Origin: Rebecca billardiae RCC1528
Lineage: Eukaryota; Protista; Haptophyta
NCBI GenBank assembly: GCA_965240325.2
Contig: OZ251226.1
Span: 1,364,001 to 1,428,000 of the forward strand
Length of the DNA: 64,000 nucleotides
Direction: 5' to 3'
The notes under the pieces are model-generated. The model had not been told where the DNA came from and ran no database searches. It was given only the letters and a program-made list of their open reading frames with translations. This document shows positions 20,335 through 27,246 of this stretch, one piece after another. The translations under genes were made by a program, and so were the position numbers. Positions within the stretch are counted from its first letter, which is position 1. Every line of letters starts with the position of its first letter.

Positions 20335-23322
20335 ATGTTTGGCGGCAGATCGGACATGTCGCCCGGAGGCTTCATGCCGTCCGGTCGACGCGCGAGGGCG
20401 GACATGGACGAGGCATACGACCCATTACGCTCGCGTGGCGGCATGCCGGACTCCGGCCCGTCGGCGCACTGGCAAGCGGTGTGCTCCACGCGCGAGCTCG
20501 CGGATGCACCGCGCCGGACAGCCCAACACGTGTGCGGGCTGTGCACGATCTGAGCCGCGTCTTTGGGCGCGCTGCTTGCGGCGGCTCTTCGCGCGCAGGT
20601 GATGACAGGGCACCTGAACCGCATCGAGCAGACGCTGCAGCACATGCTCATCTCGCCGCAGCACATGCTGCGCTCGCCGCCGCCGCCGCAGCTGTCACCG
20701 CCCGCCCGTGGGCAGTACATCCCGACCGAGCTTGTGGAGCAGCTGCGAGCGCTCGTGTTCCAGATGACGCAGGCGGTGTACGAGGGGGGTTACGACAGCG
20801 GGTACAGCGTGCGCTCGCCGCCGCTCCCGAGCGACGCGGAGCGCCGACTCGACGCGCGGATCGACCGGCTGTCGCAGCTGCTGGCGCAGAGCGGCGAGCC
20901 GCTGCAGTGGTCAAACGGCCCGGCGGCGGCGGGCGCGGAGACGGCGGCGGCGGGGGTGGTGGCGGCGAGCGCGCGGCTGACGGAGCTCGAGAGGGAGCTC
21001 GAGCGCCTGCGCGCGCACTACGAGCAGGAAGTGCGACTGCTGCGCACCGAGCTGCAGCAGAAGGCTGCACACATCGAAATGCTTGAGGCTCGCGCAGCGG
21101 CTGTGGCCGCGATGGCGTCAGCGCCTCAGCCGCCGGCGCAGCCGGCGCAGCCGGCGCAGCCAGCGGCGCAGTACGCGCAGTACGCGCCGCCGCCGGCGGC
21201 GGCGGCGCAGCCAGCGACGCAGTACGCGCCGCCGCCGCTGCCGGCGCAGCCCGCCGCCGCGTCGCTGCCCCCGCAGCCGGCCTCGGTGCCGCAGCAGCCT
21301 GCGCAGCCGGCGAGGCCCCCACTTCCGGTGGCACCGCCGCCCGCGCCGCCCACAGTCGCACCGGAGCAGACGCCGTCGCTGCCCGCCACGCCGGCGACGT
21401 CGGCGCTCCCCGCGTCGCTGGGTGGCATGCTCTCTCCGCTCGCCGTGCTCGCGAGCAGGACATCGCTCCCACCGCCGCTCGATCTGCAGCCACCGGCGAG
21501 GGGCTTGTCTCTCTACGCGCCGGACGCGCCCGCCGCGCCTCCGCCGCCGCCCGCCGTCTCGACGCCGGTCGCGGCGCCGGTCGCGGCGCCGGTGCCTTCG
21601 GCACCCGCGCAGGTGCCACTGGCGCCAGCCGCCGCGGTGCCACCAGCGCCGCCACCGAACACGTTCGCGCTGCCGCCCGCGAGCAAGGAGCTGCTCGGCG
21701 CGCTGCGGGCGGCGGGCGAGGGGCGCGGCGCCCTGCCGACTGTCGGCGGCGGCACGTGGCGTGAGGCGCTCGCGGCAGCGATCAGCCCGATGCAGCTGGC
21801 GGTGGTGTTCGTGGACATGACGGTGCCGGGCGTCGTGATCGCCGAGTGCAGCGCGGGCTTCGAGCGCACGACGGGCTTCCCGAGGCACGAGACCGTCGGC
21901 CGCAACTGCCGCTTCCTGCAGGGGCCGCAGACGGAGCCCAAGGCCGTGTCCAAGATGGTGCGCGCGCTGCGCAAGGCGAAGGAGCTGCATATCAAGGTGA
22001 CCAACTACCGCAAGGACGGCTCGCGGTTCACCAACGAGCTGACGCTCCTGCCCGTGATGGACACGAACGGCGGGTACCGCTACTCGATCGGCGTGCAGTC
22101 CGCCATCGAGGGGCGCAGCGTGGCGGAGGAGGTGGCGCTCGCGGAGCTGCGCGCCGAGCTGCCACGGCTCATGCCCGCGCATGCGCAGCCCGCCGCCTTC
22201 GACCAGGCGGCGGTGAGCGTGTCCGACCTGGACAAGGACGAGCAGTACCGCAACTCGCTGGTCCGGTTCACCAAGATGCTGTGGACCATCGACACCGAGT
22301 CCACGCTCGCGCAGCTCATGGGCGTGCCCGAGGCGAGCGACGCGTTTCGTCAATTCCTCGCCGAGAGCAACGAGCACGCGCAGCTCGACCTCTGGCTGGC
22401 CGCGCAGGGGCTGCAGGCGCTCGCCGACCCGAAGGCGCGCGACGCGTCGGCGCGCGCGATGCTCGAGCAGTACGCCGGGATGAGCAGCGAGCAGGCCGCC
22501 GCGATGGACGCGAGCGCCACGCTCGAGCGCGCCGAGGCGGCGAAGGAGCAGCTAGTCAGCGAGCTGCTGCCGCGCTTCATCAAGTCGCGCGCGTCCGAGC
22601 CGATCATACGCTCCCTGCTCTCGACCACGTCGATGGTCGACGTCTCGCAGCTGGTGTGGGAGAAGTACACGATCCCGCCCGACCTGGCGGGGTTCGTGCA
22701 CTCCTTCGTCGCGGTGGCGGAGACGCTCCCCGCGTGCATCGTGCTTTCGGACATGTCCATCCCGGGCAACCCGATGTTTTTTGTGAACACGGAGTTCTGC
22801 CGCGTGACGGGCTACCCGAAGGACGAGGCGCAGGGCCGGAACTGCCGATTCCTGCAGGGGCCGCAGACCGAGCCGGCGTCGGTGGCGGTGATCCAGGACA
22901 CGCTCCGCCGCGGCGCGGACTGCTTCGTGAAGATCACCAACTACCGCAAGAACGGCGAGACGTTCCAGAACCTGCTGTCGATGCGGCCGCTGCACGACTC
23001 GAACGGCGTGTACCGCATGTGCATCGGGGTCCAGTTCGCCGTCGACAACGGGCAGGACTTGAGGCGGCGCGTGAAGAAGCTCGCGCTGCTGCTGCAGCTG
23101 CTCCCGTCGCAGATCGACGTCGCGCACGACTCGACCAAAGCCGGGCCGAAGCACACGCCGCGCCACGCCAGCCACGAGGCCGGCGTCTCCATCGAGGACC
23201 AGCTCGAGCAGGCGCTCACGCGCACCGCGCCCGTGCTCGACGCGGCAGACATGGTCGGCGCCGAGCGGTACGCGGACCACCACCAGGAGATGCTCGAGGA
23301 GCTCCGAGTCTCGAGGCGCTGA
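20335..23322 (+). CDS. Blue-light receptor candidate: coiled-coil/Pro-rich N-terminus + LOV + RGS-like + LOV; intron 20479-20598
   Basis: Two GRNCRFLQG motifs, each followed by NYRK.G and IGVQ. The intervening segment LAQLMGVPEASDAFRQFLAESNEHAQLDLWLA...ARAMLEQY...LLPRFIKS resembles an RGS domain. Confidence 0.85.
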
Positions 23323-23936: not shown

Positions 23937-26360
23937 TTATCCGAAGGATTGGCGCGGTCTTCGGCGCGGCGATGTGTGCTGCGGCACGGTGTCGGCGGTG
24001 CCAGCGCCTCGGCTCGATGATGCCGACGCCTTCGGCGCGGCCGTCGCGATGCCCAGCGCCGCCGCCGCCGCCGCTGCAGTCTGGCCGTTTGCCCTGCGCA
24101 CGCGCGGCGTCGTCGGCGTCGCCATGCGCGCGCGCGGTGCTGACGACGGGCGATGGCGCAGCGCGGCGCTGGCCGCCGACTCGAGCGTGCGCCCCATGAG
24201 CCGCTCGATCTCGCCCAGCCTCAGCTCGCGCACAAACCCGAGCCGCGCCAAGTGCGACCGCTTGCGCTGGTTGCTAGCGCGCGTCCGCATCGCGTCCGCG
24301 CGCGTCGCGTCGTGCTCGCGCGCGTGCGCGCGCGCCGCGCGCTTCGCTCGCTCCTCGTGCCCCAGGGCTGTCCGGCAGAAGGCCAGGCTGCGCTCGGCGT
24401 GGTCGACGCACCGCGCGAGCACGTCCACGTCGGCGAGGCACGCCGCCACGCGCTCCGCGCGCGCGTGCAGCTGCTCGTCCTCGAGCGCGCTCAGCGTGCG
24501 AGCGCCGCGCCACTCCAGAGCAGCCGACTGATCGGCCAGTTCGGCGCAGTGCGCGCCGGTTTCGGCGATGGCGGCGCGCAGCCGGCTCGCCACGCCGTCG
24601 AGGCTGGAGCGGGCGCGCTCGGCGAGCGCGACGTCGCGCTCCGTGCGCGAGATCTGGTCCACACGACCTGCAAGCTCCGCCACGCTGCGCGCGCGCCGCT
24701 CGCGCAGCGCGTCCCGACGCTCAGCGAGCTCTGAGACGGCCGCGTGTGCGCGCGCGCGCTCCGCAGCGGCCTCGTCGCACGCGGCGGTGGCGCGCGCCGC
24801 GGCCTCGTGCGCCGCGCCGAGCTGCTCGAGGCGCTGCTCGAGCTGCGCGGCGAGGCCCGAGCTGGCCCGCCCGCGCGCCTCCGCCTCCGCCTCCGCCCCC
24901 TCGATCGCCGCGCGCGCCGCGGCCGCGCGACCCTCCGCCCGCTGCAGCCCGGCCGCCTGCCTGCGCAGCCGCTGCCTCAGCTCGCCCTCGCGCGTGCCGG
25001 CCGAGTGCTGCGCCGCATGCGCCGCGTCGAGCTGCGCGCGGAGCTCGGACGCCGTGCGCGCCGCCTCGGCGCGGCGCGCGGCCATGCGCTCGAGCGCGTC
25101 GCGCACGTGCGCCATCTCCTCCCGTGCCGCGGCCGCGCGCTCGTCAGCTGCTGTGATGTCGCGCTCGGCGCGCGCGCGCATGCTCGCTCGCGCGCTCGCG
25201 TCCGCCGCGCGCCGGTGCGCGGCTTCGGCCTCGTCGCGGGCGCCGGTGGCGGCCTGGCCCTCCAGCCGGCGGGCGAGGAGCTCGTCGGCCTCGAGCGCGC
25301 CGAGCTGCGAGCGCAGCCGCGCCTCGACCACGCGCTCGCGCGCCAGCTCCTCCTCCCGCTCCCGGACTGAGCTCCGGACTTGCTTCAGCTCGGCGGCGCG
25401 CGACGCGCCCTCGTCGTCCAGTGCGCGCGCGGCGGCGCGCCGGCGCTCGAGCTCGGCGCGAAGGCGCGCGGAGGCTGCCTCGAGCTCGGAGGCGCGTGTG
25501 CATGCGTCGCGCCACTCGCGCCCCGCGCCCCACGCCACCGACTCGGCGCGCGCCACCTCGCGCTCGAGCTGCACGGCGTGCGTGCGCGCAGACAGGAGTG
25601 CCTGCGTGCGCTCGCGCGTCTCCGCCCGTGCGCGCTCCGAGTGCGCGCGCAAAGCGTCGGTGCTCGCGGAGAGGGCGTCGACGAGGCGGCGTGCCTCGAG
25701 GCCCACCGCCTCCGCCACGCCTCGCTCAGCCCGCTGCAGCGCGAGCTGCTCCTCCAGCTCCGCGAGCGTGGCCGCGCGGATCTCGGCGTGCGCCTCGAGC
25801 GCCGCGCGCGTCTGAAGGCCGTCCACTGCCGCAAGCGCATCGCGCGACACCTCGGACTCGGCGGCGAGGGCGTCGGCTCGGGCGAGGCGAGCCCGCTGCT
25901 CGACGGCACGAGCGCTCTCCTCCGCTGCGTGCAACGCGGCTGACGCGCGCTCGAGCCGTGCGCGCTCGTCCGCAAGCAGCCGCTCCGCGCGATGCCTCTG
26001 CGACGCTGCTGCGTCGTGCCGCGCGCTGAGCTCGCCAGCGTCGGCCTTGGCCGCGCGCGAGGCGTTGGCGGCGGCGCGGAGCGCGCGCGTGGTGGAGACG
26101 AGACGCTGCTGCGCGAGGACCAGCCCGTCCTCCGCTCGCGATGCCGCCGTCTCGAGGGCCTTGAGCTCGTCGCGCGCGCGCTGTGCTTGACGCCGCGCGC
26201 GGCCGAGCGCGTCCGATGCGCGCCGGTGCCGGCGGCCGAGCTGCTCGCGCAGGGCGGCGTTGAGCCGGCGCATCGCCGCATGCCCTGCCGGAAGCTCGGC
26301 CGCCGCGGACGCGCCGCCCTCGCCCAGGCGCAGCTCGCGCCAGTGCGAGCCCCACCACAT
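23937..26360 (-). CDS. Long coiled-coil protein (possibly CCDC40-like axonemal protein; assignment weak)
   Basis: ~800-codon A/E/R/L heptad-rich ORF, divergent from RPS14. The segment MRRLNAALREQL...LAQQRL loosely recalls the CCDC40 N-terminus. Confidence 0.6.
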   Translation of the reverse strand: MWWGSHWRELRLGEGGASAAAELPAGHAAMRRLNAALREQLGRRHRRASDALGRARRQAQRARDELKALETAASRAEDGLVLAQQRLVSTTRALRAAANASRAAKADAGELSARHDAAASQRHRAERLLADERARLERASAALHAAEESARAVEQRARLARADALAAESEVSRDALAAVDGLQTRAALEAHAEIRAATLAELEEQLALQRAERGVAEAVGLEARRLVDALSASTDALRAHSERARAETRERTQALLSARTHAVQLEREVARAESVAWGAGREWRDACTRASELEAASARLRAELERRRAAARALDDEGASRAAELKQVRSSVREREEELARERVVEARLRSQLGALEADELLARRLEGQAATGARDEAEAAHRRAADASARASMRARAERDITAADERAAAAREEMAHVRDALERMAARRAEAARTASELRAQLDAAHAAQHSAGTREGELRQRLRRQAAGLQRAEGRAAAARAAIEGAEAEAEARGRASSGLAAQLEQRLEQLGAAHEAAARATAACDEAAAERARAHAAVSELAERRDALRERRARSVAELAGRVDQISRTERDVALAERARSSLDGVASRLRAAIAETGAHCAELADQSAALEWRGARTLSALEDEQLHARAERVAACLADVDVLARCVDHAERSLAFCRTALGHEERAKRAARAHAREHDATRADAMRTRASNQRKRSHLARLGFVRELRLGEIERLMGRTLESAASAALRHRPSSAPRARMATPTTPRVRRANGQTAAAAAAALGIATAAPKASASSSRGAGTADTVPQHTSPRRRPRQSFG

Positions 26361-26493
26361 GCGCGAGCCAACGGAAGCTTTGGCCTTCACAGTCAAGCCA
26401 GCCGGCCGCCATGGAAGTCCGGGAGGCTTCCGGAGCACCGGACATTGCACTGAAGTCGAGGCCACGCGACCTCGCCTGTCCTGTGTCGACGCG

Positions 26494-27246
<753 letters not shown>

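What the first reader, a model, noticed from the sequence alone, without database searches (positions are those of the whole stretch)
20335..23322. LOV-RGS-LOV protein: candidate helmchrome-like, light-gated G-protein regulator in a haptophyte-like alga
Seen: two complete LOV domains (~21800-22100 and ~22720-23040). Both retain the photoactive Cys (GRNCRFLQG) and the signalling Gln (IGVQ). They sandwich a ~100-aa helical segment (~22290-22590) with RGS hallmarks, and are preceded by a coiled coil and a long Pro/Ala linker. There is no kinase (so not phototropin) and no clear bZIP basic region (so not aureochrome). Known: RGS+LOV receptors are described as stramenopile flagellar helmchrome (repeated RGS-LOV-LOV units) and fungal RGS-LOV proteins. 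Inference: this is a distinct architecture that may couple blue light to G-alpha GAP activity or to eyespot/flagellar signalling, and could be useful as an optogenetic part.
Basis: partly seen in the sequence, partly recalled or inferred. Interest (0 to 1): 0.85.

Follow-up and report, generated by a model that had tools for sequence, protein, structure and literature searches.

The report
Haptophyte helmchrome-like LOV-RGS-LOV photoreceptor gene
This alga's gene encodes a likely blue-light sensor in which two flavin-type LOV domains flank a shortened RGS domain; it is one stand-alone member of a family already noted in marine haptophytes, and no member has been tested at the bench.

Summary
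One open frame (window 20563-23322, +) encodes a coiled coil, a Pro/Ala linker, LOV1, an RGS domain, LOV2 and a conserved 70-residue tail.

- **LOV domains:** both keep the adduct cysteine and the flavin-contacting residues.
- **RGS domain:** the middle segment is RGS by Pfam, by profile search and by predicted fold.
- **Start:** The first ATG after it is 20602.

The claim of a distinct architecture does not hold. More than 40 environmental and Pavlovales/Prymnesium proteins carry the same LOV-RGS-LOV-tail unit with the same ~313-residue Cys-to-Cys spacing. Coesel et al. 2021 already reported helmchrome-like LOV plus single-RGS proteins in these haptophyte classes. A tree places LOV2 as sister to the RGS-adjacent LOV of stramenopile helmchromes.

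The scan had already noted this module elsewhere in the same genome, as long arrays fused to ion channels.

GAP activity is doubtful. The RGS domain lacks a ~25-residue stretch (about helix 6). It has Ala and Gln at the two Asn positions that contact G-alpha. Its conservation is strongest next to the LOV junctions.

Verdict: a new member of a known, uncharacterised kind. Moderate interest.

The parts
20602..23322 (+). Minimal single-exon coding sequence (906 codons plus stop). The frame is open from 20554, and the 5' end is unresolved.
   Evidence: ORF listing. In-frame TGA at 20551-20553 and first ATG at 20602. Third-position GC 0.84-1.00 in this frame. Collinear 51% alignment to the 661-aa environmental homologue P0020.
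20551..20553 (+).
20971..21120 (+). Probable coiled coil (ORF residues 137-186).
   Evidence: Heptad-like Glu/Leu/Arg sequence. Weak Pfam hits to the Filament and Tup_N coiled-coil families. Nearest named atlas clusters are coiled-coil families, with weak scores. No homologue shares this part.
21121..21762 (+). Pro/Ala-rich low-complexity linker (residues 187-400; 29% Pro, 25% Ala).
   Evidence: Not conserved in relatives apart from its last ~30 residues.
21766..22164 (+). LOV1 with its flanking A'-alpha and J-alpha helices (residues 402-534). Adduct Cys449 is at 21907-21909. Gln512 is retained.
   Evidence: Pfam. Family HMM 166.8 bits. Gap-free alignment to solved LOV domains, E 5e-28 to 1e-20. 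Key residues. AlphaFold model.
22195..22659 (+). Helmchrome-type RGS domain (residues 545-699; Pfam core 583-666). It is shortened around helix 6.
   Evidence: Pfam 29.7 and 34.3 bits against a cut-off of 23.9. Family profile against PDB: RGS5 at E 1.5e-8, and the top 34 hits are all RGS or axin. Model pLDDT 92. All 50 listed Foldseek hits contain RGS or RGS-homology domains. VIA Z 11.1, rmsd 3.1 A over 101 residues to RGS8. Motif mapping.
22657..23109 (+). LOV2 with its conserved junction helix and basic J-alpha ending in LLPS (residues 699-849). Adduct Cys761 is at 22843-22845. Gln824 is retained.
   Evidence: Family HMM 268 bits. PDB hits to aureochrome and phototropin LOVs at E 6e-25. Key residues. 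Tree. Junction and J-alpha compared with Ectocarpus.
23110..23316 (+). Family-specific C-terminal tail (residues 850-918). It is helical with low model confidence.
   Evidence: Conserved in haptophyte relatives and absent from stramenopile helmchromes. pLDDT about 60. No Pfam family.

Best explanation
**What it is.** The gene encodes a stand-alone, single-unit member of the haptophyte helmchrome-like LOV-RGS-LOV photoreceptor family.

**Shown here**
- Two LOV domains have every residue needed for flavin binding and Cys-adduct formation.
- A true but shortened RGS fold sits between them.
- The two ends of the RGS domain run directly into the J-alpha helix of LOV1 and the A'-alpha helix of LOV2.
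- The RGS-LOV2 pair is orthologous to the RGS-LOV pair of stramenopile helmchromes.

**Inferred mechanism**
- Blue light forms the flavin-cysteine adduct in one or both LOVs.
- The flanking helices loosen. This changes the exposure of the clamped RGS domain and frees the basic J-alpha helix and tail.
- The N-terminal coiled coil holds the protein as a dimer or oligomer, or on a cell structure.
- The signal leaves as light-dependent binding to a partner.

**My estimates**
- Working photoreceptor: about 0.85.
- Output by protein or membrane binding through the RGS/J-alpha region: about 0.6.
- The partner is a G-alpha subunit: about 0.35.
- Efficient RGS4-like GAP catalysis: about 0.2.
For: - Domain calls come from Pfam and family HMMs.
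- Both LOVs align without gaps to photoactive solved LOVs and keep NCRFLQ, the two Asn, the Arg and the Gln.
- The whole module folds confidently as one unit (pLDDT 87.8, pTM 0.71).
- The RGS fold is confirmed by profile and structure.
- The same unit, with ~313-residue Cys spacing, occurs in 43 copies among the 120 listed relatives, some of them in tandem.
- In the tree, LOV2 falls in a haptophyte clade (99/93) that is sister to the helmchrome Cys-LOV (99/96). LOV1 groups with Pavlovales (100/95).
- Conservation within the RGS domain is highest in helix 1 and helices 8-9, next to the LOV junctions. The RGS-to-LOV2 junction is nearly invariant.
- The Gln at the SEEN-Asn position is the top residue in at least 90% of aligned copies. 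Ectocarpus helmchrome has it too.
- Equivalents of RGS4 Asp163 and Arg167 are kept as Glu667 and Arg671.
- Haptophytes have expanded G-alpha families (PMC3971589).
- Haptophyte helmchrome-like transcripts peak at dawn in the ocean (PMC8017926).
Against: - There is no transcript evidence for this gene. No RNA run was listed.
- No member of the family has been tested biochemically.
- The G-alpha-contacting Asn of the KEVN loop is Ala647 and the SEEN Glu-Asn is Ala606-Gln607. The helix-5/6 loop is poorly conserved, and about 25 residues around helix 6 are deleted relative to canonical and helmchrome RGS domains.
- The module also occurs as 10-copy arrays and fused to a cyclic-nucleotide-type ion channel (P0121 and P0123). 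That is hard to reconcile with a dedicated GAP role.
- I could not read model coordinates, so the domain contacts are inferred from sequence order and confidence scores only.
Confidence: 0.6

Rival explanations
1. One reading: a light-gated GTPase-activating protein. In light, the RGS domain binds GTP-bound G-alpha and speeds hydrolysis as RGS4 does, coupling blue light to heterotrimeric G-protein signalling at the flagellum or eyespot.
For: - There is true RGS homology and fold.
- The Glu667/Arg671 equivalents of the helix 7-8 contact residues are retained.
- A polar Gln is conserved at the SEEN-Asn position.
- The Pavlovales CCMP2436 paralogue has Ser at the KEVN-Asn position, as GAIP does.
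- Haptophytes have many G-alpha genes.
Against: - Ala647 replaces the key Asn in this copy.
- The helix-6 region is deleted, and the helix-5/6 loop is the least conserved part of the domain.
- The family profile recovers only 225 clusters among 1.84 billion representatives at E up to 0.001. This looks like a separate, divergent RGS branch.
- Array and channel fusions of the same unit exist.
- No G-alpha link has been shown even for helmchrome in the papers I read.
Confidence: 0.2
2. BcLOV4-like membrane switch. The RGS-derived domain no longer acts on G proteins. Instead it masks the basic, amphipathic J-alpha helix and tail of LOV2 in the dark. Light releases them, and the protein moves onto anionic membranes or a flagellar structure.
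For: - Fungal RGS-LOV BcLOV4 works this way, with the RGS domain as the dark-state inhibitor (PMC6099885).
- LOV2 is followed by a helix with five basic residues and a Leu-rich face. It is conserved from haptophytes to Ectocarpus.
- Conservation of the RGS domain is concentrated at the LOV-facing end.
- Coesel et al. raise the same possibility.
Against: - The helix lacks the aromatic FKK/FFK motifs that mediate BcLOV4 lipid binding.
- The domain order differs: LOV-RGS-LOV-tail here against RGS-LOV-DUF in BcLOV4.
- A basic amphipathic J-alpha helix is common in LOV proteins and need not bind lipid.
Confidence: 0.25
3. A decayed or detached copy of one unit from the giant LOV/RGS array genes of the same genome, with no function of its own, or a mis-modelled fragment of a larger gene.
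For: - Earlier scan notes place giant arrays of the same unit 60 kb and 125 kb beyond this window's end.
- The 5' end of this gene is unresolved.
- No RNA evidence exists.
Against: - The frame is intact for 919 codons, with third-position GC 0.92-1.00 over the domains.
- All family-invariant residues are kept.
- A six-frame HMM scan finds only this one unit in the 64-kb window.
- The stop falls where the module ends in the relatives mapped (e.g. P0032 and P0002).
- P0020 is a complete single-unit homologue on a short environmental contig.
Confidence: 0.05

Closest known systems
Haptophyte 'helmchrome-like' LOV plus single-RGS proteins (Coesel et al. 2021, PNAS, PMC8017926)
   Same: It has LOV domains combined with one RGS domain and comes from a Pavlovophyceae/Prymnesiophyceae-type lineage. 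It has the same unit, LOV1-RGS-LOV2-tail, with 312 residues between the two adduct cysteines against 307-334 in 43 related copies. It is 51% identical to Pavlovales sp. CCMP2436 proteins and to the environmental protein P0020.
   Different: It has a private N-terminal coiled coil and a 214-residue Pro/Ala linker. LOV1 keeps the signalling Gln, whereas 31 of the 41 aligned copies have Leu there. The paper's main text, as read here, says only that LOV is coupled to a single RGS domain. It gives no LOV-RGS-LOV order and no residue-level analysis.
Stramenopile helmchrome (Fu et al. 2014, 2016; e.g. Ectocarpus, P0013, 1537 aa)
   Same: An RGS domain is followed directly by a Cys-containing LOV. The junction helix is homologous, the J-alpha helix ends in LLPS, and the RGS carries 'AQL(D/E)' in place of the canonical 'EENL' motif. 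LOV2 is sister to the helmchrome Cys-LOV clade (99/96).
   Different: Helmchrome is a two-fold repeat of RGS, LOV, a degenerate RGS-like stretch and a second LOV. In Ectocarpus the second LOV has lost the cysteine (GRNSKFLQ). Here there is one unit that starts with a LOV, and both LOVs keep the cysteine. The RGS is about 25 residues shorter. LOV1 is not resolved as orthologous to the second helmchrome LOV. Flagellar location is unknown here.
Fungal RGS-LOV photoreceptors (BcLOV4; Glantz et al. 2018, PMC6099885)
   Same: An RGS domain and a photoactive-type LOV sit in one chain. The LOV is followed by a basic helix. This is the only RGS-LOV class with a tested mechanism.
   Different: BcLOV4 has the order RGS-LOV-DUF with a single LOV. 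Its lipid-binding helix has aromatic FKK/FFK motifs that are absent here. The fungal class is not among the listed sequence relatives.
Phototropin and aureochrome
   Same: The LOV domains are of the same photoactive type, with E 1e-20 to 1e-25 against solved phototropin and aureochrome LOV structures. Phototropin also has two LOVs per chain.
   Different: It has no kinase and no bZIP domain. An RGS domain lies between the two LOVs.

Membership tests
LOV photosensor domain (flavin-binding PAS) | PAS fold with the GXNCRFLQ motif, including the adduct cysteine | tested here: met
   PAS_9 twice. GRNCRFLQG at Cys449 and Cys761. The LOV fold appears in the model, and the top structural hits are LOV proteins.
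LOV photosensor domain (flavin-binding PAS) | Flavin-contacting Arg, two Asn, and the signalling Gln on the last strand | tested here: met
   LOV1 has Arg470, Asn481, Asn491 and Gln512. LOV2 has Arg782, Asn803 and Gln824. Both align without gaps to solved photoactive LOVs.
LOV photosensor domain (flavin-binding PAS) | Flavin binding and a 450-to-390 nm photocycle | not testable with these tools
   This needs recombinant protein and spectroscopy.
RGS domain (PF00615) | Sequence match above the curated threshold | tested here: met
   29.7 bits in the whole protein and 34.3 bits for the excised segment, against a cut-off of 23.9. The family profile hits RGS5 at E 1.5e-8.
RGS domain (PF00615) | All-helical RGS fold | tested here: met
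   Model pLDDT 92.2. All 50 listed Foldseek hits contain RGS or RGS-homology domains, with target-normalised TM 0.54-0.69 for the stand-alone domains. VIA Z 10.9-11.1 and rmsd 3.1-3.3 A over about 100 residues to RGS8, RGS16 and RGS4. The fold is shortened by about 25 residues around helix 6.
RGS domain (PF00615) | G-alpha contact residues of GAP-active RGS proteins (Glu-Asn of the SEEN motif, Asn of the KEVN loop, Asp and Arg of helix 7-8). RGS4 numbering is recalled from Tesmer et al. 1997. | tested here: not met
   SEEN corresponds to E604-H605-A606-Q607. The KEVN Asn corresponds to Ala647. Only the Asp163/Arg167 equivalents are kept, as Glu667 and Arg671. The alignment in the helix-5/6 loop agrees between HMMER and MAFFT, but the region is divergent.
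RGS domain (PF00615) | GTPase-accelerating activity on a G-alpha subunit | not testable with these tools
   This needs a biochemical assay with the host G-alpha.
Stramenopile helmchrome | RGS domain directly followed by a Cys-containing LOV of the helmchrome clade | tested here: met
   Domain maps. Shared junction and J-alpha motifs. LOV2 is sister to the helmchrome Cys-LOVs, 99/96.
Stramenopile helmchrome | Two-fold repeated RGS-LOV-LOV architecture of about 1,400-1,600 residues | tested here: not met
   There is one unit only, with the LOV first. There is no further unit anywhere in the 64-kb window.
Stramenopile helmchrome | Location in the posterior flagellum or paraflagellar body, and a role in phototaxis | not testable with these tools
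   This is known for brown algae only, from the literature.
Haptophyte helmchrome-like LOV-RGS-LOV family | Collinear LOV1-RGS-LOV2-tail unit with about 313 residues between the adduct cysteines | tested here: met
   The spacing here is 312 residues, against 307-334 in 43 copies. All four family HMMs match in order. The identity to P0020 is 51% and collinear.
Fungal RGS-LOV (BcLOV4 class) | RGS-LOV-DUF order, with a polybasic amphipathic helix carrying FKK/FFK motifs after the LOV | tested here: not met
   The order differs. The post-LOV2 helix is basic (RRRVKK) but has no aromatic residues.
Phototropin / aureochrome | Ser/Thr kinase domain (phototropin) or bZIP domain (aureochrome) | tested here: not met
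   No such Pfam match at E up to 1.

The most novel reading that the evidence does not exclude
The LOV-RGS-LOV unit may be a self-contained natural light switch. In it, an RGS-derived helical domain, clamped at both ends by LOV helices, would act as the moving part rather than as a GAP. The stand-alone, coiled-coil-tethered copy would then work in trans on the same targets as the channel-fused arrays on the same scaffold, for example by co-assembling with them. Alternatively, it would be the first light-controlled G-alpha-binding protein of haptophytes.
Probability: 0.15. Interest if true: 0.7.

Novelty: new member of a known kind. Interest (0 to 1): 0.4.

Why it matters
Haptophytes are major ocean phytoplankton, and their blue-light receptors are essentially uncharacterised. 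This copy is short, single-unit and apparently intron-free over its domains. That makes it a convenient construct for the first biochemical test of the family: flavin photocycle, light-dependent G-alpha, lipid or partner binding, and localisation. A compact 450-residue unit in which two LOV domains clamp a helical effector could also serve optogenetics. The finding does not reveal a new kind of receptor. The class was reported from metatranscriptomes in 2021, and this genome holds many more copies of the unit, including channel fusions that are the more surprising objects.

Tried and rejected
- **Transcript evidence.** The look-up of sequencing runs listed no RNA run. The 5' end and expression remain open.
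I looked for an intron that would remove the TGA at 20551-20553. One donor/acceptor pair checked by eye was out of phase. With no homology in the N-terminal region and no reads, I left the question open.
- **N-terminal region.** BLAST against relatives, Pfam and the protein atlas gave only generic coiled-coil hints.
- **Downstream minus-strand ORF** (23940-27131): no Pfam family.
- **Whole-module Foldseek search.** It returned only LOV proteins, as expected. The RGS segment therefore had to be folded alone.
- **Phylogeny with phototropin and aureochrome.** I did not build it. No stored full sequences of those families were available without typing them in. I relied on PDB E-values and on the published LOV tree.
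- **Glantz et al. 2016 LOV survey.** It is not held in the library.
- **G-alpha genes in this genome.** Earlier notes could not tell me whether it encodes G-alpha.
- **Model coordinates.** They are not readable in scripts, so I could not check whether the LOVs bury the RGS G-alpha face.
Full report
**Observation.**

The region holds one long open frame, 20563-23322 on the + strand, 919 codons. The tool lists a TTG start under the bacterial code. For a eukaryote the first usable ATG is 20602. An in-frame TGA lies at 20551-20553.

Third-position GC in this frame is 0.84-0.94 over the N-terminal part and 0.92-1.00 over the domains. It drops to 0.74 and then 0.42 after the stop. Across 20335-20634 it is 0.80, like the upstream flank. 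I take 20602-23322 as the minimal coding sequence and regard the 5' end as unresolved. No RNA run was listed for this stretch.

**Domains.**

Pfam finds two PAS_9/LOV domains. It also finds an RGS domain above its curated cut-off: 29.7 bits in context, 34.3 bits excised, cut-off 23.9. It finds no kinase and no bZIP.

HMMs built from relatives give these boundaries:
- LOV1: residues 402-534
- RGS: residues 545-699
- LOV2: residues 699-849
- conserved tail: residues 850-918

Both LOVs align without gaps to solved, photoactive LOV domains such as aureochrome, phototropin and bacterial LOV kinases, at E 1e-20 to 5e-28. Both keep GRNCRFLQG, the flavin-contacting Arg and Asn residues, and the signalling Gln.

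The N-terminal 400 residues hold a probable coiled coil (137-186) and a 214-residue linker that is 29% Pro and 25% Ala. Relatives do not share this part.

**Is the middle segment an RGS fold?**

Yes, on four lines of evidence:
- The single sequence hits GAIP and RGS17 at E about 2e-3.
- A profile of 42 family segments hits RGS5 at 1.5e-8 over the whole RGS box. The top 34 PDB hits are all RGS or axin domains.
- The AlphaFold model of the segment has pLDDT 92.2.
- All 50 listed Foldseek matches contain RGS or RGS-homology domains. VIA-align gives Z 10.9-11.1 and rmsd about 3.1-3.3 A over about 100 residues to RGS8, RGS16 and RGS4 in their G-alpha complexes.

The tool warns that Z below about 13 can be non-specific for helical bundles. 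Here, though, sequence and fold point to the same family.

The whole 520-residue unit also folds confidently: pLDDT 87.8, pTM 0.71. In the model, LOV1's J-alpha helix leads into the long first RGS helix. The last RGS helix leads through a nearly invariant junction into LOV2's A'-alpha helix.

**Relatives.**

The database search returned more than 1,500 significant proteins.
- The best named ones are two partial proteins of Pavlovales sp. CCMP2436 (about 51% identity).
- Many 520-700-residue environmental proteins cover the whole unit at 43-51% identity.
- One hit is from a Prymnesium genome bin.
- Stramenopile helmchromes follow (Ectocarpus, other brown algae, pelagophytes, chrysophytes) at 33-38% identity.

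Among the 120 listed proteins, 43 unit copies have two NCRFL motifs 307-334 residues apart. The spacing here is 312. Several proteins carry two units in tandem. The closest single-unit relative, P0020 (661 aa), sits on a 2.5-kb environmental contig. It aligns collinearly from the start of LOV1 to the end of the tail.

A six-frame scan with the family HMMs finds only this one unit in the 64-kb window. The stop codon falls where the module ends in the relatives mapped, such as P0032 and P0002. So this is a stand-alone single-unit gene, not a fragment of a helmchrome.

**Relation to helmchrome.**

Mapped with the haptophyte HMMs, Ectocarpus helmchrome reads as a two-fold repeat of four parts:
- an RGS domain
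- a Cys-containing LOV
- a weak RGS-like stretch
- a second LOV that has lost the cysteine (GRNSKFLQ)

One of the weak stretches gets a sub-threshold Pfam RGS hit of 19.4 bits over nearly the full profile.

The RGS-LOV pair is clearly shared with the window's protein:
- The helix before the LOV is homologous.
- The basic J-alpha helix ends in LLPS in both.
- Both RGS domains carry 'AQL(D/E)' where canonical RGS domains have 'EENL'.

In a maximum-likelihood tree of 75 LOV domains, rooted on a green-algal LOV kinase:
- The window's LOV2 lies in a haptophyte LOV2 clade (99/93).
- That clade is sister to the helmchrome Cys-LOVs (joint support 99/96).
- LOV1 groups with the Pavlovales and P0020 LOV1s (100/95) inside a haptophyte LOV1 clade (94/94).
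- The position of that LOV1 clade relative to the second helmchrome LOV is unresolved.

The protein is therefore a haptophyte relative of helmchrome with a different unit order and number. It is not a helmchrome orthologue.

**Literature.**

Coesel et al. [quoted passage not shown] They note that these had not been described before. They show that the transcripts peak at dawn, and they raise a BcLOV4-like mechanism.

A 2026 survey confirms RGS/LOV combinations in metatranscriptomes. I found no functional study of the haptophyte class. The class is thus known in silico and untested at the bench.

**Can it be a GAP?**

Two independent alignments, HMMER to GAIP/RGS5/RGS16 and MAFFT to a canonical RGS domain in P0240, agree:
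- The canonical Ser-Glu-Glu-Asn loop corresponds to Glu604-His605-Ala606-Gln607.
- The Asn of the Lys-Glu-Val-Asn loop corresponds to Ala647. From recalled knowledge of RGS4-G-alpha-i1 (Tesmer et al. 1997), this is the residue closest to the catalytic Gln of G-alpha.
- The Asp and Arg of helix 7-8 are kept as Glu667 and Arg671.
- About 25 residues around helix 6 are missing relative to both canonical and helmchrome RGS domains.

Across the family, conservation is highest in helix 1 and helices 8-9. These are the ends that join the LOVs. It is lowest in the helix-5/6 loop. The Gln at the SEEN-Asn position is the top residue in at least 90% of aligned copies.

The family profile recovers only 225 clusters among 1.84 billion representatives at E up to 0.001. 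This looks like a small, divergent RGS branch.

Some members are arrays or channel fusions:
- P0121 has 10 units in 4,197 residues.
- P0123 has LOV-RGS-LOV units followed by an ion-transport domain, a cyclic-nucleotide-binding domain and ankyrin repeats.

Earlier notes of this scan describe giant arrays of the same unit fused to channels in this very genome. Two of them lie 60 kb and 125 kb beyond this window's end. I could not read those sequences, but P0123 shows independently that such fusions exist.

Haptophytes do have expanded G-alpha families (PMC3971589), so a G-alpha partner is possible. Taken together, the data favour a light-switched binding module over an efficient RGS4-type catalyst.

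**Mechanism and rivals.**

I commit to a blue-light sensor in which adduct formation in the LOVs loosens the helices that clamp the RGS domain. This would also free the basic J-alpha helix and tail, changing what the protein binds. The coiled coil would provide oligomerisation or anchoring.

My estimates:
- Working photoreceptor: 0.85.
- Binding-type output: 0.6.
- G-alpha as the partner: 0.35.
- Efficient GAP catalysis: 0.2.

The last is unlikely, given the intact frame, the codon bias and the retained invariant residues.

**Verdict.**

This is a new member of a known but uncharacterised kind. Interest is moderate: it is a handy single-unit construct for the first bench test of the family, not a new architecture.

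Noticed in passing
P0123 (2567 aa, JGI metagenome) and P0121 (4197 aa, JGI metagenome); not in the window: Public metagenome proteins carry the same LOV-RGS-LOV unit in other contexts. P0123 has it in front of an ion-transport domain, a cyclic-nucleotide-binding domain and ankyrin repeats. P0121 has it as a 10-unit array. This independently matches earlier scan notes of LOV/RGS array-channel fusions in this genome.
   Followed up: partly
P0013 (Ectocarpus helmchrome) residues 373-524 and 1160-1335: The stretch between the two LOVs of each helmchrome half matches the haptophyte RGS profile at 35-36 bits. One copy also gets a sub-threshold Pfam RGS hit of 19.4 bits over profile positions 2-111. 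Helmchrome may therefore hold four RGS-type domains, two of them degenerate, rather than the two usually drawn.
   Followed up: partly
Alignment A1, column of window residue Gln512 (LOV1): In 31 of 41 family copies, the signalling Gln of LOV1 is Leu. The adduct Cys is invariant in all 41. The window's LOV1 and 7 other aligned copies keep Gln. LOV1 may signal differently in most of the aligned relatives.
   Followed up: partly
window 23940-27131, minus strand: A 1064-codon open frame rich in Ala, Arg and Glu lies tail-to-tail with the photoreceptor gene. It looks like coiled coil and has no Pfam family. Whether it is a real gene is open, since long chance frames are common at this GC content.
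   Followed up: partly
It could be an upstream ORF, a first exon or chance. Codon-position GC does not separate it from non-coding flank.
   Followed up: partly
VIA-align hit 9fqr_Ou: One structural match of the RGS model is an RGS-type domain in a protein of the bovine sperm axonemal doublet (Z 9.9). This shows that RGS-fold proteins can be built into flagella, which is where helmchrome resides.
   Followed up: no
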